Shown: positions 481-19,366, counted from the whole stretch's first letter. The stretch: DNA of 60,171 bases, filler included, from Dugesia japonica (GCA_001938525.1; 5 parts of 5 records of this genome joined end to end with filler, not necessarily neighbours in it), one strand, 5' to 3'. Notes: generated by a model from the letters alone, not told the origin. Program-made: numbers and translations.

Positions 481-1916
481 ATTTCAAGAAAAAAAATTTA
501 CTTTGATCGGCTATTTGGGAGCCTGTGGGGCCCCGTTGATTCAGAATCCACATTTGAAATCGTTTCAAAATGCATTTTTAAAAATNNNNATTTTTAAAAA
601 TTATGTATTAACCTTTAAAAACCGTATTACAGTTTAAAAAATTGTATGCGTGCTTATGATTTTGTGTGTGCATACTTGTGCTTATCTTTTTTCTACCCAC
701 TATAATATAAAAAACTTATTAAACTTTAAAAGAAAAATTTACGTTATAAATCACCAATTTTTATTCAATTATATTATACAGAGCCAATCACATCGCGGCA
801 AATTATTATCAGGTTATTTATTTTCTAAATTTACTTATTATTTAGTGTATTCTTATGTAATAAGTTTAAGTTGTGTAAATATATATTATAGTTTTCATAT
901 TTAAAAGTTGACTTTCAACCTGGAGTTCGTCAGTACCCACCAAAAGTTTATAACTCAGAAATATGCCCTACTACTGAAAAAAGTTATCAACCACTGGTGT
1001 AAATTCTCCAGTTTTGAGAAAAAACATAAAACGATTAACACTCATAATACAAACTATGTTATCAATCATTGAAAATATATTTTATTCAAATAATACTGTA
1101 AATTTCATAAAAGCTAGCGTCCTATTCAACGCCAAATGTATAAAAAATGTTTGACTTTGTTTATCATCGCAATTTTCAAAGTTCATGTTACCATTAGCTA
1201 TTAAAAGCTTCATTCATTTGACCAACTTTTCTAACATATATTAATAATTATAACACTAAATGGTCAATGTGTTAAATAAAATATTTTATAATAGAAAAAT
1301 TTCAATTTTTGTTTGGTTTTCACTGTGTTAACTTTTCAATGAACAGCGAAATTTAGTAGAAAATTACATTAAAATTGTTCTAACAAAATCGTTCCGTTTT
1401 GTTTCATACATTAAAAGATTTTAAGTTTCGGATAACTTTACGTTAAANNNNNNNNNNNNNNNNNNNNNNNNNNNNNNNNNNNNNNNNAGTTTCAAAATAA
1501 AATTTAAATAATTTTGTCATTACAAATAATTTAACTTATTTAAACGAACCATAAAAAAGTAAACTTAATTTAAATATTTAATTTTGCAAAAGGTAAAATA
1601 AATTTCTTTTTGAAGTTAATTATTTTTAAAATTAAAATCAAAATGTTATTGTGAAAACATGAAAACAACTAATTAATATAGTTTAATTTAATTTTTTTTT
1701 AAATATTTCCAAGTTTTGAAAAGAGTTTAAAATTTTCATGACAGAATTATGGTTTTAAAATTTAAACTATCATATTATTAATAAATAAAATAACTTTCTA
1801 ATTTCAAATTATGACGTGTGTTTAACTGGATTAATTATTATCTTTATTATTGTAAATCAAATTCAACTTCTATAGATTGCAATACATATTAAAATTTTGT
1901 AATCTTATTATAAGGA

Positions 1917-4900
1917 ATGAACATTATAGGATTATTTTGGTGGATTTTTGTCTTCAAATCATTAGGTAAGTTGAATTTACATATTTTATTATATGTATTA
2001 TTAAACCATGTAGAATGTATAAATATTAAAATCCATCCATTTGAATCGGCTTTTGTTAAATTCTCTGGCGAGAGAGATGATTTCAAAGAAATTATTTATA
2101 AAAATCCATTGGAACATAAACTTAATATCTCTGCTTCCATCGGTAATTTAGTGAAAACTAAAAATCTCGAACCATTAAATTATGTTACGAATGTCTATAC
2201 AGACAAAGCCAGAATATCCATTCAAGCAAATCCATTAATGGACTCATTGATAATTAATGCTATTTGCTTATTTAGTCATGACAATTTAGCATCTTTAGTA
2301 TATCAGAAGATTTGCTGTGAAGTCACAATGAAAAAATTTGGAAAATTTTCCAAAATCTTTGATCACAAATTTTGTACAATGAACGACAATCAAGGCTCAA
2401 GCGCCTGTTCCGTACAATTTATTGTAGCCAAAGACAACTTCGATTTCAGGAATTCATCAGAAGTACAATTGGATATTTCATCACGAGTTTTTGGAACTCA
2501 AGATTCAAAATGTCTTTCAAATGCATCTGATATGATTAATCTCGCTTTTGGATACCCTGCAAAAGTTATTATAATGCAAGATTTGCTTGTTAAATGGGAT
2601 TTAATCGATCAAACAAAGTCTTTTGGAGAATTATTAATAGGAGTTCCTGCTGACGTGATGGAAGCCGGATCAAAATCGGCATTTCCTGTGAAATTGAATT
2701 CAACAATTTCATTTTCAAAATTAGAAATAAAGTAGGTGGAATTTTTTTTAATTTAAAGTTTATTTTCCACTATATATTCAATTTAATAAATAAATATTAT
2801 ATTATAATTGTTAATATATTGAAATATAATTGTTAATATATTGAAATATAATTGTAAATATATTGAGATATAATTATTGGTAAACTTAACTTCAAAAACT
2901 ACATCAGCCATACTATTAGTTGGTTTAACAAAATTAGATATTTTGGCAAATAAGTCATTTAAATCAAAATTGAGAAGTGATTGGGAAATTTTCACGATGA
3001 ACTCGTATATTAAGTATAAAGAATCGGGAATACCTATTAAAAGACTTCTCACGAAGAAATATCTAGTTGGATTAGTGCAACATGGGAAGATGTTTTTGAG
3101 AAAACGAAGAATAATATTGTATTCTGAAGACATAACTTTATTTTCTAATGAAGTTGATGAGGATAAAAGAATTTGCTTTTATGAAGAAAATGCTGATAAT
3201 GAATTTTATGAGTTTCTTATAAACGGTTTCGAATATATTAGCGAAGAGGACTAAATTAAATAAAATTGTTGAGAAATTCATTTATTAATTATTTATATGT
3301 TTTAAATTATTAAAAATAATTTTCTTTAACAAGCCGCAGCTTATAATGGACAAGCAGGGTAATCACATATTTGATTAAAATCCTCAATTTTAATCCACTT
3401 AATTCTCTAATGTGATTTTGATGACCTCCATTATGTAATCTCTGAAGTAAAGAGTTAAAATTTCTGATGCGTGCTTAATTATGCAATCAATTTTTTATAC
3501 AGATTTATTATTAACTATTTTCAGATGTTTTCTTGGTAAAGGCTTGAAATTTTCAGCTACCACATTCGATTCTTCACGATTTAAAGGAAAAGAAGACGAT
3601 GTTTCAGATACTGAGAAAATTATTTCAGTGGAAGAGCCGAGATTTTTAGAAAGTCCTAGGTAAAGGATTTTTTCCTAATTTTACTTTTTTGAATTTCCGA
3701 CATTTTAGTAATGAAAATTCTGTAGAATTATTGATGAATTTATGGATTCAGCATCAAAATACAGTGCAAAAGTATAATCAAGACAACTGGATTAGGTGTA
3801 AAGTAGTAAAAGGGTTTATTGATAAAACAAAACATATNNNNNNNNNNNNNNNNNNNNNNNNNNNNNNNNNNNNNNTTATTCCTGTTCATTTTGGACAGTT
3901 TATAATTTTTCCAATAATGAAGGTAAATCAATAAAATTTATAATTAAATTAAAAATTCAATAAAAAATCTGATTTTTGTTTTAGTAATTTCGAATTTATT
4001 TAATTAGTAATTAATAATAGAATCGGTATTATTGATGATTATTCTATTATATTCTATGATGAAATAATTTCTTACCCAATCAAATCTCAGAAAGCATAGA
4101 CACACAACCGCGAAATCGCTGAACATAGTATAATCGATTAATTTTTGGAAATTAGACATTGACATTAATTTGTTCGATACTCTATTGTGCAATTTGGCAA
4201 ACTTAAGTTTATAATGTCATGCTATTTTAAAAAAATCAATCAATCATTACCATTTCAAATTTAATTAATTTTTTAATGTGGCGTAGAAATAATTTTAAAA
4301 TATAAAATCAAGTTAGATTTCCACTTAAACTGATTTTTAGTAATAATAAATTCTTCGTATGACTTGGCAACACGCATATTTGTGATTCATTGGTCACGAT
4401 TGGTAAAACATTTAACTTCGTGTAACCCTTTTACTAATTAATTAGATTTATCATTTGCATAAGCATCACATGATTTTTTTTCTCTGTTACGTAACACATA
4501 AATGACTATGCTATTAGATAATAGCTGAAACGAGCAAATCAATAGCNAATGTCTATCAGGAAAGCGAATATAGAAATATATAGTCCAGTGACTCATGAAT
4601 AAAATTGATATTTCTACTGTCGGAACAAAATTATGCTTACAGTGAATAATTGATGCCTGTAAAGATATCAACTTACACTTGAGAATCTCTGAAATCCTTC
4701 ATTTTCTTTGTTTTATATTGAATTTTATTCAATCTACACATACTTATATTCTTATTAAAATTTAAACCCATTTTTATTAAATCTCACTAGAAATCGTTTT
4801 ATTTCAAAATTTTATTAATATCTATAATTTTAACATAATATATAAAATTAAAGCGTATTGAATTAGTTTTACAATTATTATGAGAATAATTGTTTGACCT

Positions 4901-7900
4901 CATTATTGGTCGTATTTGAGATTAAATTAAATTAAACGCTTCGATCNAAATATTATTTCATATAAATTAAATATTTTGAGAAATAATTGAATTAATAAAT
5001 AAATAAAAATGAAAACAATAGTTGTCCAAAAAGGTAAAAATTGTGAAGTTAAAAAAGTTAAATTTTCAATAAATTAAAAAGTTTAAATCAAAATGATGGT
5101 GTTTTTTATTTCTTTTTAGTTGCTAGTAATTCGAATTTTCGACAATTGTCGTCTTCAGGAATTGACTTTTTGATTTATTAAAGATTTATTTATTGAAATA
5201 AAAATATTTGGAATTTATTTTATTGAATTTTAATTGGTTTATTTATTTAATTAGTATAAATTAGATTGATTTTAGGTTTTTCTTCTTTAATTAGTAATTT
5301 TCATGTTTCTTTTTGTCAATTGTGTGGAAATATAGTCTGTTCCTAGCGTTTATCATGTTATATTATGCTGTTCTGATGAAATTTTTTTTTGTTGCTTAAT
5401 TCATGTTCCAACAGTTCTGCATATTTCAACTATACATATTTCTTTACATATAGTGCATGCTATTTTAAAAATGTCGCACCAAACTATAAACAAAAATGAA
5501 AAACTGGAAAAGATATAATTAATTCGTAAATTAAAAATTTGTATAATAATATATAAATACTTCGATTTTTGGCACCGCGAACCAAAAAAGTTTGGTAACC
5601 ACTGTCCTATATAATCTATATATTATCAGGAAACCTAGTAATTTCAATTCAGATCAAAGTGCTAACGAAGTCTACAGTTATTATCAATAAATTAAAATAA
5701 ACTCATTCACCACTCAGTCATTCTATAAATAAGCAGTCTAAATAAGTATAGAGTAAAAATCAATGAAAAATTTTCCATTTTTTAATTTTTATTAATGAAA
5801 ACATTTTTTCTTTAATTATTAATTTCACTTGACGTTAAAAATTTTCATTCATAGAAAATAGAAAACTTTTTGAAGTGAATTTAAAATTTAAAATATATCA
5901 AATTGATGAATTAACGAAATCACTTTAACCCATTATCCCCAGTCGTCCCTATTTGAGGACGGATGAAAATAAAAACGTATGGACTTTACTATGAGCGGAT
6001 CATGATTTTCTTTAATTATGACCTCGTCTATAAAAACAAACGAAGCGATATGTAGCTTTATCTCACCTCCCTTTAAATATTTTAGTGCTTTACAGTCTGT
6101 ATTGGAACGCTATTTATTATCAATTGACGATGTTTATTATTATTGATCAATTTCCCCTTCGGCGTTAATGAGTTAATAGTTTAATAATTTGCTACTGCTA
6201 CTTCAATAACTCTTTAATTTCAAAAATATTTCATTTTTCGAAATCTATATTAACACATTTCATGCATGTATTTCACGTATATATTTGAGCATATCCATAG
6301 ATAGTCTGCTAAGGAGGTCGCATTTTGGTATTCTTTTCATAGAAGATGTGAATGGCTCTGTTTCTTGCTGGTTTGAAGTGATTCATCATTAACTCAATAC
6401 AAATAAATACTTTAATGTGACCCACACTACAACGATAGACTGTAAAAATACGTTAAAGTACATTTTCTACAATGTAGAATCTACATGCAATCTGTTAACT
6501 ACATTCCATTGTTATTATTAAAATGGGTAAACTGATATTTCAAAAGAAAAAAATGATTAATTTATTATTTAAGATTACATTTATTTTTTACTCACAAACT
6601 CATTTGATCTAAATATTTGTTTTCCGTTTAGCATTGATCTAAATATAACAAATAGCCTTTTTTTAGAATTCGGTATATTTTTCTATTCTCAATCCAGTCT
6701 TGGGTCCTATTGTAATCGAGAAAAACAATTACAAAATTTTATCAGCATATCAAATTGGTGATTACTCCTTTTCTGATATAAGCGAGAAAACTAAATGCCA
6801 GCCAATTTCAAAATCTGTGTTGCGATGTCCATTTGATAATGATTTACCTGTAAATACTAAAATGGAAGTTGTTCAAAAACCAAATTGGAATGTTATTCTC
6901 TCTTTGCTTAGCTGGAGAAAATTGGTAACCATTCCAATCGAGTTATGGCAAGCGGTTGATTGGAGATTAGATATAACAGATCGTAATTTGAATGAAATTT
7001 CTAATTGGAATTATAAAAGAAAGTTAGTTCATTTTTCCACTATTCAATTCATGGAATTGCAATTAGAATAATTTTTTACGGAGTTATATAAATCATTAAA
7101 ATATAATAGATTTAATTTTTAGCCGATACTATCTTAAATATTGTTAAAATATTGTTAAATTTATTGTATAGAGGTCATGTAAAATAAAAAACTTCCCATT
7201 CGATATAAAAGTAAAAATTTCAGTAATAAGTAATATTTTCCTGATGCATCTAGTATTCCTCTTACTTTACTTGTATATCGAGATTTCCTCCTATCTTATT
7301 CATTATTGTACAATTGTGATAAATGGTTAACATTTCAAATGGAGTATGTATAAATTTTTTAGACTAAATATTTTTAATTAAAAAATATTACTTTATTTGT
7401 GATAAACGAAAACAGCAGTTTATATACAAATTTTGCAATTTAATAGTATTTAATGATATTTTAAATTGATTGTGAAAATTTCAGAATGTGATGTAATAAT
7501 TTGTATTGTTGTGATATGATGCAAAATTTTGAGTTCAGGCGAAAATGAGAGGTTTAACAACGTTTTTGTTTCAATCAAACTTTGATCATATTTGTTGGGA
7601 AGCATTATAGAAGAATGATGATAATTTATTTTTGACATTTAATTGTTTAAATGATTAAAAAGTAAACACAAATCATATATTTTATTAAAATCAATTTTTG
7701 AATTTATCATTTCATTAACAAATATAACTATTAATATAATAATTGTTGATCAGAACCATTTATTTCATTTTTCAATTTTTGACAATGTCTTAAGGAATTC
7801 ACATTTGTACTCAGTGTTGACTTGAATATTATTGAGGGTTATTTCTCGACGTAGAAGATTTTTATTATTGAACCTTAACCAATAAATAAGGAGAAATAAA

Positions 7901-16594: not shown

Positions 16595-16783
16595 TTACTG
16601 TTGGGTTTTTAGGATTTGGCACTTTAAAATGTTAGCTTCAAATTTACCGANNNNNNNNNNNNNNNNNNNNNNNNNNNNNNNNNNNNNNNNNNNNNNNNNN
16701 NNNNNNNNNNNNNNNNNNNNNNNNNNCATGCCCCTTTCTTTCCACGGGTTCAGCGCGACTTTGTGGTATCGCGTCTTACTCAT
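16595..16783 (-). CDS. Small ORF G (MSKTRYHKVALNPWKERGM..), partly in N gap
   Basis: CAG acceptor 5 nt before ATG; stop overlaps AATAAA (16591-16596). Confidence 0.4.
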   Translation of the reverse strand: MSKTRYHKVALNPWKERGMXXXXXXXXXXXXXXXXXXXXXXXXXXGKFEANILKCQILKTQQ

Positions 16784-16924
16784 AAAACCTGTGAACCCGG
16801 TCTGTACGAATCTAACATGCTCAGTAAAAATAAATCTAGTAGATGCAAATAAATAAGTAGTACTATAATACAAATATCACTCCAACCAACACTCAATAAC
16901 ATTTATTTTTACAGTATACTCCGT

Positions 16925-17194
16925 TTATTCGGCATCCAAATCGATCGTCGACTCCGTAATTGTACTTGTTTCCTCTGGGGATCGATAGTGGAGCATCAAT
17001 GTCCGCAGAGATACAAACATGGAGCTTTCTTTGTCTGCGTACGTCTTGATGACGTAGGCCATCAATCGATTCACGTGCTGCAGGGACAGTTCCTTCTCCT
17101 TGATTTGATTATATTTGGCTGTTGATTTCAAGACCTGCCCCTTCAACCTCAAGATTTCATTTTTTAACTCTCGACGCTCCTCTTTCCATCTTTG
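16925..17194 (-). CDS. Small coiled-coil ORF F (3' exon; 5' part in N gap, probable first exon with ATG at 17433)
   Basis: Open frame ..ELKNEILRLKGQVLKSTAKYNQIKEKEL..; GC-richer than flanks; stop overlaps AATAAA. Confidence 0.5.
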   Translation of the reverse strand, partial: QRWKEERRELKNEILRLKGQVLKSTAKYNQIKEKELSLQHVNRLMAYVIKTYADKESSMFVSLRTLMLHYRSPEETSTITESTIDLDAE

Positions 17195-17554
17195 NNNNNN
17201 NNNNNNNNNNNNNNNNNNNNNNNNNNNNNNNNNNNNNNNNNNNNNNNNNNNNNNNNNNNNNNNNNNNNNNNNNNNNNNNNNNNNNNNNNTAATAAAGTTT
17301 AAATGAACTAAAGTAATACTCCAGTAAAGGAACCCAAACTTAGTTAACGTTAACCGATTGCTATTAGAATAAAAGAAAATTGACTCTGTGTTAGGCTTAC
17401 ACCAAAAAAAAATTTAGATTTGACACCATGCATTTCTATCTACTACTGCCTCTGCAGATTTCACAATGAATAACCATTGAGTGACATACATATCACTTAG
17501 AACTCTTTAATAAAAAATTGAAAAGCAAGACCAAAATCCCGTAATACTCAACAT

Positions 17555-17997
17555 TTATTGATCCTTGGTCGCAAGCGACTCCACCTTTACGACGACCAAC
17601 TGCTGGACACCGCTCAACTCCTGGGTGCTTTCAGGTGATAGTGCCAAAACCTGATCTTCGAGTTGACCCAATAATAAATTATGCTCCATCTGCTGCCGAA
17701 CCAAGTTTTCCGTACTTTCTCTAATTGCTTGTCTCTCTTGCCGGAGTCTATCATTTTCTTGTTGACATAACAGCAACTTCGATTGGGTATTCCTTAGCTG
17801 TTGTTTTAGGTCCCGGAATTTCGTAACCAATTGGCCGCCTTTGTAGAGTAACTCAGTTTTTCCTTTTTCGTATACCGCTTTCTGTTCNNNNNNNNNNNNN
17901 NNNNNNNNNNNNNNNNNNNNNNNNNNNNNNNNNNNNNNNNNNNNNNNNCGTCATTCGTAAGCACAAACGGGATGTGCGGTTTAAAATAGGCTGTCAT
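17555..17997 (-). CDS. Small coiled-coil ORF E (frameshift near 17830 and N gap)
   Basis: CAG-ATT-ATG start; heptad-like LKQQLRNTQSKLLLCQQENDRLRQERQ; stop overlaps AATAAA. Confidence 0.5.
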
Positions 17998-19366
17998 AAT
18001 CTGTATAATAAAAAATATTTAATTATAATTTTAAGCAATAATTGAAAAATGAGATAAATAATTAGCTATAGTTTCTTCAGCCTATCAGTCCTGATTCCTT
18101 GCTCCGAACATGCGAAACAGAGAAGATGACGATTTAAAACCATGATCTTTCCTTGTTCTCATGTTTATAGAACTCTCACAAGATGTACTATCAAAAAAAA
18201 TTCTTTTCCGACGACACTGTAGGGAAAAAATTAAATTATAAATTTTCACAAAATTGGTTACTTCTATGACTATAAAAATAAATGAGTTTCAATTGAAATC
18301 ACGTTTTTAATTTAGGCTTTATAAAATACTGAGATCAGTTCAATACACTCTTATATTTAAATGATAAAAAAAATAAAAGATAACAAGTGAAAATCACAAC
18401 TACAAAACTATAATATTTCAAGCCAATTCCGCATTAACGACNNGGTTCCGCCTGCTACAACGCATTATTTAACAAACAACAAAGGTATTAATCGAGCTCT
18501 CATAAATCATTTAACTTCTGGCGACATTTTCTATCAGGTACAATTCTGCAAATCTATCGTTCTTCCGTAATTTCAACTTCAATAATTTTATACTGTTAAT
18601 CGATTGTCACCATTCTGATGTTCTAATTTCCCCATCAAATTCCCTGGTTCTATTCCATTTTTGAATTTCAACTCTCGGCCATCCTAATATTTCGGCCACA
18701 ATTTCTCCATCTAATTTTCTTGATACTAGCAGTATGACCGTTTCGAGGGCACTCGGCATCACATGTAGAAAAAGAAAAAAATTAAGGTTTTTATTTTGGA
18801 AATTTGATAAAATAATAATAAAAAAAATATTGCTTACTAATCGAATTTATTTCAATTCTCCTTTTCCCGAAANNNNNNNNNNNNNNNNNNNNNNNNNNNN
18901 NNNNNNNNNNNNNNNNNNNNNNNNNNNNNNNNNNNNNNAAAAAATAAAATTTCGTTAAGTAAAATATTTTTTTTCTTTTAAAAATTTTAAGAAAACTTCT
19001 GTCTAATTCCCTAGTGCAAACGAGTTTTATTACTCGTTTACACCCCAACTTGGCATGATTCATTTGCTCGCCAATCGTCTTCGTTTTTCGTCCAATCCGG
19101 GTTTTTGATTGGTTGTTGTCTTCGTCTTCATTGTTGTGTTGTGTNNNNNNNNNNNNNNNNNNNNNNNNNNNNNNNNNNNNNNNNNNNNNNNNNNNNNNNN
19201 NNNNNNNNNNNNNGGATTGTTACTAAGAGAAAGTCCTTGTCTAGCAGGAAATGATTCAGCTAATCTGCTGATAATTTTCGGTTTATTTTTCATCAGCTAG
19301 ACAAGGACAGATGACTGGACCAGCCATAATTATAACATTAATTAATATCAAATGGATAATATCCAT

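What the first reader, a model, noticed from the sequence alone, without database searches (positions are those of the whole stretch)
5128..5163. Intact minimal hammerhead ribozyme antisense within a host intron
Seen: the minus strand reads AAUUC CUGAAGA C GAC-AAUU-GUC GAAA AUUC GAAUU, a full catalytic core with perfect stem I and predicted cleavage after UUC (between 5133 and 5132). Established: minimal type I HHRs with palindromic stem III occur in Penelope-like element pLTRs and retrozymes and are thought to cleave as dimers. It heads a repeat found four times in this window.
Basis: partly seen in the sequence, partly recalled or inferred. Interest (0 to 1): 0.75.

Follow-up and report, generated by a model that had tools for sequence, protein, structure and literature searches.

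The report
Hammerhead ribozyme relic of Penelope retrotransposon
The 36-base motif is a real minimal hammerhead ribozyme, but it is the ordinary 3'-end signature of a broken Penelope-like retrotransposon lying backwards in a host intron, one of about ten thousand such copies in this genome.

Summary
It has the CUGAAGA and GAAA core boxes, a 5-bp helix I, a 3-bp helix II with G10.1-C11.1, one extra base after A9, a self-complementary AAUU in place of helix III, and C17. A covariance model built only from other genomic copies finds it at 62.9 bits (E 1e-15) and finds nothing else in the window. The claim that the repeat occurs four times in the window is not confirmed.

The motif lies 84 nt downstream of the stop codon of a 5'-truncated, stop-ridden GIY-YIG endonuclease remnant (5473 to 5247). 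It is therefore the 3' region of a dead Penelope-like element (PLE). The genome holds 9,791 exact motifs of this design, against 0 for the reversed control, in at least five lineages. These lineages keep helix I and the palindrome through two-sided changes.

RNA reads show a GT..AG host intron (3921-6664, plus strand) around the element. They show no pile-up of RNA ends at the predicted cut.

This matches the published "min-HHR" of metazoan PLEs (Cervera and de la Pena 2014). This copy is most likely inert. Interest is low.

The parts
5128..5163 (-). Minimal (helix III-less) type I hammerhead motif. Helix I is 5163-5159 with 5132-5128. C3-A9 is 5158-5152. The extra base C is at 5151. Helix II is 5150-5148 with 5143-5141, and its loop AAUU is 5147-5144. 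G12-A14 is 5140-5138. The self-complementary A15.1 A U U16.1 is 5137-5134. C17 is at 5133. The predicted cut is 5133/5132.
   Evidence: Sequence; model R1 built without the window gives 62.9 bits, E 1.3e-15; pair counts on 39 copies.
5247..5473 (-). Remnant of the C-terminal GIY-YIG endonuclease coding region of a PLE. It is 5'-truncated near 5473, lacks about 45 nt relative to other copies, and has in-frame stops. The family's stop codon is at 5249-5247.
   Evidence: tblastn with the L091 endonuclease ORF gives 44% identity over 64 aa, E 3e-8. DNA homology to GIY-YIG loci L044, L046 and L053. Pfam GIY-YIG hits on L091 and L052 ORFs.
5164..5246 (-). 3' untranslated stretch between the endonuclease stop codon and the hammerhead.
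   Evidence: Alignment of 11 and 26 copies.
5020..5127 (-). Post-hammerhead 3' region: an A-rich variable stretch, then a degenerate copy of the family 'tail' (about 5093-5020).
   Evidence: Alignments. Homology to other copies ends between 5058 and 5020.
4869..4946 (-). Second, separate 3'-tail fragment of the more abundant PLE lineage. It has no hammerhead and ends in a 9-bp hairpin (4893-4871). The element end is at 4869.
   Evidence: BLAST to L040, L087 and L090. 70-103 paralogous RNA reads per run (the three paired runs) break off at 4869.
3921..6664 (+). Host intron (GT..AG) that contains both PLE fragments in antisense orientation.
   Evidence: Spliced reads 3920/6665 in run X24 (4 reads, 2 starts). 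Exon reads lie on one strand only.

Best explanation
The motif is the hammerhead of a dead, 5'-truncated Penelope-like retrotransposon (PLE) that inserted backwards into an intron of a plus-strand host gene.

In the active parent elements the motif lies in the 3' region, about 85 nt after the RT-endonuclease ORF. When elements insert as partial tandems, this region becomes the pseudo-LTR.

The motif has no helix III of its own. Its A15.1-A-U-U16.1 strand is self-complementary, so a catalytic fold needs a second copy, either a tandem neighbour or a second RNA. The two copies would form a shared 4-bp helix III and cut after C17. This would trim more-than-unit-length transcripts. The step is probably inefficient and helped by the element's protein.

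Shown here: the motif, its PLE context, its copy number, the two-sided changes in helix I and in the palindrome, and the host intron.
Inferred from the literature: dimer cleavage and its role.

The window copy itself is most likely inert. It has no partner within reach, its strand is not the host transcript's strand, and its extra base C can pair with G12.
For: - Motif and coordinates.
- PLE context: the endonuclease remnant is contiguous with the motif. Hammerhead variants lie 120-230 nt after GIY-YIG ORFs in L044, L045, L046 and L048. RT pieces with YxDD are contiguous with the GIY-YIG ORF in L091. RVT_1 scores 31.7 bits on an L052 ORF. There are at least 5,719 RT candidates genome-wide.
- Copies are 5'-truncated to variable extents. 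Inverted or tandem partial copies are common (joints).
- Copy number: 6,590, 5,898 and 9,791 motif hits against 2, 2 and 0 for reversed controls.
- Structure: 83% of cells pair, against 25-50% in slid registers, and 0 of 500 shuffles reach the covariation score. Helix I pairs 4-48 and 5-47 switch among AU, UA and CG. The palindrome switches between AAUU and AUAU. 96 of the first 100 hits of a pattern allowing all four W-W forms are self-complementary.
- All four features of Cervera and de la Pena 2014 are present: consensus families with compensatory changes, a base between A9 and G10.1, G10.1-C11.1, and palindromic 15.2-16.2.
Against: - No cleavage was seen. In four RNA runs no pile-up of read ends falls at 5133/5132, and reads run across the site. 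These reads come mostly from paralogues at under 90% likeness and from poly(A) libraries.
- Within the window's own subfamily, chosen by flank alone, the core is no better conserved (0.81-0.86) than the upstream flank (0.85-0.92). This is as expected for neutrally decaying dead copies.
- The helix III duplex alone is predicted at +0.8 kcal/mol. The hammerhead-competent fold is only -3.1 kcal/mol, against -6.1 for the monomer's MFE fold; a homodimer's MFE is -23.4.
- Published PLE hammerheads cleave poorly in vitro. They are dispensable for insertion in vitro.
- No full-length element with hammerheads at both ends could be fetched.
Confidence: 0.85

Rival explanations
1. The conserved motif is kept by the element for a purpose other than self-cleavage, for example as a binding or folding signal for the RT-endonuclease near the site where reverse transcription starts. 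The hammerhead-like core would then be vestigial or only incidentally catalytic.
For: No RNA ends at the predicted site. The predicted fold is very weak. The Anolis PLE hammerhead cut only with protein present, and mutants inserted normally in vitro. PLE clades without hammerheads proliferate well.
Against: The bases kept across five lineages are exactly the catalytic boxes, together with G10.1-C11.1 and a non-G at position 17. Hammerheads in plant and fungal PLEs are canonical and active.
Confidence: 0.1
2. The repeat is a non-autonomous element, either a non-LTR retrozyme or an Sm-alpha-like SINE, rather than a fragment of an autonomous PLE.
For: The abundant lineage is seen mostly as pieces of 100-350 nt. 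Vertebrate retrozymes are proposed to derive from PLE pLTRs. One locus has two direct partial copies (L002).
Against: The window copy runs straight into endonuclease coding sequence. Upstream extents of the abundant lineage vary continuously from 0 to 318 nt, as in 5' truncation, with no fixed 5' end. No tandem unit occurs in the window. No tRNA-like or pol III head was seen.
Confidence: 0.04
3. A chance hammerhead look-alike in AT-rich repeat DNA, or a ribozyme co-opted by the host gene.
For: The genome is 27% G+C. Loose CUGANGA...GAAA patterns occur 5 times in the window. Rfam reports nothing.
Against: Reversed-pattern controls give 0-2 hits against thousands. There are compensatory changes. 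The motif strand is antisense to the host pre-mRNA, so the host transcript does not contain it.
Confidence: 0.01

Closest known systems
min-HHR of metazoan Penelope-like elements (Cervera and de la Pena, Mol Biol Evol 2014, PMC4209133; dimer cleavage: Lunse, Weinberg and Breaker 2017, cited through PMC6765202)
   Same: Type I topology and CUGANGA/GAAA boxes. An unpaired base between A9 and G10.1. A G10.1-C11.1 pair. No helix III proper, with palindromic 15.x-16.x instead. A short helix I of 4-6 bp. Location in the PLE terminal repeat region. Thousands of mostly solitary copies from truncated elements, grouped in consensus families with compensatory changes. Opposite-strand pairs 100-700 bp apart.
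   Different: Helix II here is only 3 bp with a 3-4 nt loop, against 7-8 bp in Schistosoma and 6 bp in Drosophila virilis. N7 is A or C rather than U in the main lineages. Activity is untested.
Poseidon PLE of Anolis carolinensis (PAc) hammerhead (Frangieh et al., Mob DNA 2024, PMC11167929)
   Same: A hammerhead in the pLTR of an endonuclease-bearing PLE. No RNA-seq reads begin or end at the cut site. A 3' stem-loop and 'tail' lie near the element end.
   Different: In PAc the motif overlaps the ORF start. Here it lies about 85 nt after the ORF stop and 60-150 nt before the element end. Protein-assisted cleavage was shown there and is not tested here.
Canonical type I hammerheads of animal non-LTR retrozymes and Schistosoma Sm-alpha SINEs (Rfam Hammerhead_1)
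   Same: The catalytic core and type I topology. A weak palindromic helix III that favours dimers.
   Different: Those have a real helix III with a loop, 4-bp helix II and 6-bp helix I with interacting loops, and lie in ORF-less tandem units or SINEs. The window motif gets no Rfam hit even at E 10 and is joined to endonuclease coding sequence.

Membership tests
PLE min-HHR (Cervera and de la Pena 2014) | Catalytic boxes C3-A9 (CUGANGA) and G12-A14 (GAA), followed by A15.1, with position 17 not G | tested here: met
   CUGAAGA ... GAAA ... C17 at 5158-5133; model hit of 62.9 bits.
PLE min-HHR (Cervera and de la Pena 2014) | One unpaired base between A9 and G10.1 | tested here: met
   C at 5151. 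The family form is A or U. 90% of paralogous RNA reads carry A there (place 5151).
PLE min-HHR (Cervera and de la Pena 2014) | Conserved G10.1-C11.1 pair closing helix II | tested here: met
   G5150-C5141. GC in 39 of 39 copies, though my extraction pattern required it. Copies chosen by flank alone mostly keep it.
PLE min-HHR (Cervera and de la Pena 2014) | Palindromic 15.x-16.x (no own helix III), allowing a dimer | tested here: met
   AAUU at 5137-5134. Lineages carry AAUU or AUAU, a change on both sides. 96 of the first 100 hits are self-complementary when all four W-W forms were allowed.
PLE min-HHR (Cervera and de la Pena 2014) | Consensus families with compensatory changes in helix I | tested here: met
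   Pairs 4-48 and 5-47 switch among AU, UA, CG and GC. The covariation score is 0.164 against 0.092 when shuffled (0 of 500 reach it), and 83% of cells pair against 25-50% when slid.
PLE min-HHR (Cervera and de la Pena 2014) | Lies in the terminal repeat region of a PLE | tested here: met
   84 nt after the endonuclease stop in the window. The same position is seen in L044, L045 and L046. The upstream (5') repeat of a full element was not seen.
PLE min-HHR (Cervera and de la Pena 2014) | Self-cleavage (as a dimer) | not testable with these tools
   The RNA reads give no support: no end pile-up at 5133/5132. Folding predicts a weak fold.
Penelope-like element, endonuclease-bearing | Single ORF with RT followed by a C-terminal GIY-YIG endonuclease | tested here: met
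   In the related locus L091, RT pieces run into a GIY-YIG ORF on one strand. RVT_1 scores 31.7 bits and GIY-YIG 30.2 bits in L052. The window keeps only the endonuclease end.
Penelope-like element, endonuclease-bearing | Frequent 5' truncation, partial tandems and inverted partial copies | tested here: met
   Variable upstream extents. Inverted pairs in L033, L035, L097, C1700, C40385 and C11133. 'Opposite strands' and 'goes back' joints in RNA reads.
Rfam Hammerhead_1 / canonical type I hammerhead | Scores against the curated covariance model (needs helix III and loops) | tested here: not met
   No Rfam match at the gathering score or at E up to 10. The missing helix III explains this.
Non-LTR retrozyme | ORF-less head-to-tail units of 170-400 nt, each with a hammerhead, giving circular RNAs | tested here: not met
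   A single motif in the window, joined to endonuclease sequence. No fixed 5' end in the abundant lineage. Circular RNAs were not tested.

The most novel reading that the evidence does not exclude
In two of the lineages, including the window's, the hammerhead is pared to 36 nt and the helix II hairpin (GACAAUUGUC) is itself a perfect palindrome, like helix III. The favoured homodimer would then be a domain-swapped duplex rather than two hairpins (-23 kcal/mol predicted). The motif's main job could be to pair two element RNAs, which would feed the more-than-unit, tandem or inverted insertions typical of PLEs. Cleavage would be secondary.
Probability: 0.07. Interest if true: 0.5.

Novelty: new member of a known kind. 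Interest (0 to 1): 0.2.

Why it matters
This finding matters little on its own. It is a textbook case of a class described in 2014.

Three points are useful:
- It shows that the intron carries a dead PLE fragment with no bearing on the host gene.
- It documents a genome with about 10,000 intact-looking minimal hammerheads in at least five PLE lineages, with unusually short (3-bp) helix II forms.
- It illustrates that Rfam models miss this class entirely, so such motifs need a purpose-built model.

The open question for the field is whether PLE hammerheads cut in vivo and what for. This work does not advance it, beyond one more negative RNA-seq observation.

Tried and rejected
- Rfam at the gathering score and at E up to 10 found nothing.
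- In-window repeat search (repeat finder, BLAST, PLE queries, covariance model) gave no second copy, so the 'four times' claim is rejected.
I do not take this as refutation. Interspersed dead copies decay neutrally, and the informative comparison is between lineages.
- RNA reads gave no end pile-up at the cut site. This is a weak negative: poly(A) libraries, mostly paralogous reads, and a threshold of one fifth of the depth.
- A short SINE-like or retrozyme reading of the abundant lineage is rejected on variable 5' extents.
- Pfam on single short RT pieces of L091 gave no hits. Longer ORFs from L052 and L013 did hit.
- A PDB sequence search with an RT piece gave only noise.
- Pfam on five window ORFs gave nothing, so the host gene is unnamed.
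- The paper of Lunse et al. is not held.
- The organism is coded, and I did not try to identify it.

Full report
**Observation**

In hammerhead numbering:
- C3-A9 is 5158-5152.
- An extra C lies at 5151.
- Helix II is G10.1-A-C (5150-5148) with G-U-C11.1 (5143-5141), closed by an AAUU loop.
- G12-A14 is 5140-5138.
- A15.1-A-U-U16.1 is 5137-5134.
- C17 is 5133.
- Helix I is 5163-5159 paired with 5132-5128.

Rfam reports nothing here, at the gathering score or at E up to 10. The motif has no helix III, so this is expected.

The window is 26.8% G+C. A loose CUGANGA...GAAA pattern occurs five times against about one expected. The loose pattern alone therefore proves little.

**It is a repeat, but not as described**

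BLAST of 4900-5400 against the window finds no further copy.

In the whole genome (854 Mb, 648,594 contigs) a 201-nt query around the motif finds dozens of scored copies at 78-88% identity, out of 1,841 candidates. The 22-nt core finds 6,590 places within three mismatches, against 2 for the reversed control.

The family form has A where the window has C at 5151. 332 copies carry that form exactly. Only two places in the genome carry the window's version exactly.

I built a covariance model from 36 other copies, leaving the window out. It finds one match in the window, 5125-5167 on the minus strand, at 62.9 bits and E 1.3e-15. The next best hit scores 13.8 bits. The 'repeat found four times in this window' is therefore not confirmed.

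**What the repeat is**

A genome-wide search with Pfam GIY-YIG gave 94 scored matches out of 846 candidates. Several of those loci carry closely related hammerhead motifs 120-230 nt downstream of the endonuclease domain on the same strand (L044, L045, L046, L048).

The window from 5448 down to about 5067 is homologous at the DNA level to those loci, including part of the coding region. tblastn with the endonuclease ORF of L091 aligns to 5469-5323. The alignment reads FKIACTICKEICIVEICRTVGT*IK...ISSEQHNIT**TLGTDYIST against YKITCTICQETYIGETCRTIRTRIKEH..., with a 15-residue gap and in-frame stops.

The family's ORF ends at 5249-5247, so the hammerhead starts 84 nt after the stop codon.

L091 carries reverse-transcriptase pieces on the same strand that run into the GIY-YIG ORF. 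These include a FRYIDDIFF motif. Longer RT ORFs from L052 and L013 match Pfam RVT_1 at 31.7 and 24.8 bits. One 74-residue RT piece finds at least 5,719 candidates in the genome.

RT followed by a C-terminal GIY-YIG endonuclease is the hallmark of Penelope-like elements (PLEs). The window therefore holds a dead, 5'-truncated PLE copy. Its parts are an endonuclease remnant (5473-5247), a 3' untranslated stretch, the hammerhead, and a degenerate tail ending between 5058 and 5020.

Just downstream lies a second, separate tail fragment of a more abundant lineage (4946-4869). It has no hammerhead and ends in a 9-bp hairpin.

**Lineages and structure**

At least five lineages share one design:

| Lineage | Core box | Extra base | Helix II and loop | Palindrome | Position 17 | Helix I |
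|---|---|---|---|---|---|---|
| Window's | CUGAAGA | A | GAC AAUU GUC | AAUU | C | UAAUUC/GAAUUA |
| Abundant | CUGAAGA | A | GAC AAUU GUC | AAUU | U | AUAUUC/GAAUAU |
| CUGACGA, form 1 | CUGACGA | A | GAC AAG GUC | AUAU | C | CAAUUC/GAAUUG |
| CUGACGA, form 2 | CUGACGA | A | GAC AAA GUC | AUAU or AAUU | A | not tabulated |
| CUGAUGA | CUGAUGA | U | GACGG ... CCGUC (5 bp) | not tabulated | not tabulated | not tabulated |

A pattern demanding the whole design (CUGANGA-N-GAC-N3-6-GUC-GAAA-WWU-H) occurs 9,791 times, against 0 for the reversed control. Of the first 100 hits, 96 have the self-complementary AAUU or AUAU, although AAAU and AUUU were equally allowed.

On 39 copies, 83% of cells pair in the proposed helices, against 25-50% in slid registers. 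No shuffle of 500 reaches the observed covariation score. Two helix I pairs switch among AU, UA and CG.

There are caveats. The copies are related, and my extraction fixed part of helix II.

Within the window's own subfamily, sampled by the upstream flank alone, the core is no better conserved than the flank: 0.81-0.86 against 0.85-0.92. However, dead interspersed copies decay neutrally, so the comparison between lineages is the one that bears on function.

**Arrangement**

Upstream extents of the abundant lineage vary from 0 to 318 nt. This points to 5' truncation rather than a fixed short element.

Copies end either about 60-70 nt or about 115-160 nt after the hammerhead. This recalls the PLE 'tail'.

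Inverted pairs of hammerheads a few tens of bases apart are common. RNA reads show 'opposite strands' and 'goes back' joints between tail and upstream parts. These are the partial tandem and inverted structures described for PLEs.

**RNA evidence**

I laid four RNA runs of the same coded organism on 1900-7800 at 80% likeness.

- Unique parts are thinly covered, on one strand only. GT..AG joints at 1962/2011 and 3920/6665 show a plus-strand host gene whose intron 3921-6664 contains both PLE fragments in antisense. The second joint rests on four reads in one run.
- The repeat stretch 4855-5445 has depth 20-35 from both strands. Almost all of it comes from paralogues. For 5052-5445 there is a 1.4- to 2.5-fold excess of the element's sense strand.
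- No place where many molecules begin or end falls at 5133/5132, and reads run across the site.

So there is no sign of cleavage in vivo. The test is weak, because the libraries are poly(A) and the reads come from mixed copies.

**Folding**

The hammerhead-competent monomer fold (helices I and II) is predicted at -3.1 kcal/mol for the window and -5.3 for the family form. The AAUU/AAUU duplex alone is +0.8.

In the window copy the extra C pairs with G12 in the minimum-energy fold. The best homodimer (-23.4) uses the palindromic helix II strand in trans. The fold is therefore marginal without help.

**Comparison with what is known**

Cervera and de la Pena (2014) defined the 'min-HHR' of metazoan PLEs. 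Their description includes:
- no helix III;
- a base between 9 and 10.1;
- G10.1-C11.1;
- palindromic 15.2-16.2;
- families full of compensatory changes;
- thousands of mostly solitary motifs from truncated elements;
- opposite-strand pairs;
- low activity in vitro, and only as dimers.

Every sequence feature is met here.

Frangieh et al. (2024) found the Anolis PLE hammerhead to cut only with the element's protein present. It was dispensable for insertion in vitro and left no RNA-seq ends. Craig et al. (2021) note that the function remains unclear.

The differences here are a very short helix II and the position of the motif after the ORF stop.

The motif fails the Rfam type I model and the definition of a retrozyme.

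**Verdict**

The object is a new member of a well-described kind, and this particular copy is almost certainly an inert relic with no bearing on the host gene.

Limits:
- The organism is coded and was not identified.
- No full-length element with both repeats could be fetched.

Noticed in passing
window 1963-2010 and 3921-6664 (+): Spliced RNA reads define two GT..AG introns of an unnamed plus-strand host gene, one only 48 nt long. Five window ORFs, three of them flanking these introns (1917-2735, 2877-3254, 6700-7071), have no Pfam match.
   Followed up: partly
window 4869-4946 (-): A separate 78-nt PLE tail fragment without a hammerhead. It ends in a perfect 9-bp hairpin (4893-4871). In the three paired RNA runs, 70-103 paralogous reads per run break off exactly at 4869, which marks the element end.
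   Followed up: partly
window 5840-6036 and 7022-7415: Further stretches where RNA reads pile up with many differences from the window. These are other multi-copy sequences and were not identified.
   Followed up: no
L033, L035, L097; G000 contigs C1700, C40385, C11133: Hammerhead motifs occur as inverted pairs a few tens to hundreds of bases apart. This is the inverted partial-copy arrangement typical of PLEs.
   Followed up: partly
loci L013-L040 (abundant lineage): Copies end in two classes, about 60-70 nt or about 115-160 nt after the hammerhead. This may reflect two reverse-transcription start points or the PLE 'tail'.
   Followed up: no
L090 1369-2028 (+): An ORF with motifs resembling a family-B DNA polymerase (NSLYGK...). 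It may come from a Maverick/Polinton-type element and lies next to a truncated PLE.
   Followed up: no
window 16651-19213: Seven N runs of 2-95 bases in a stretch with higher G+C and several short ORFs.
   Followed up: no
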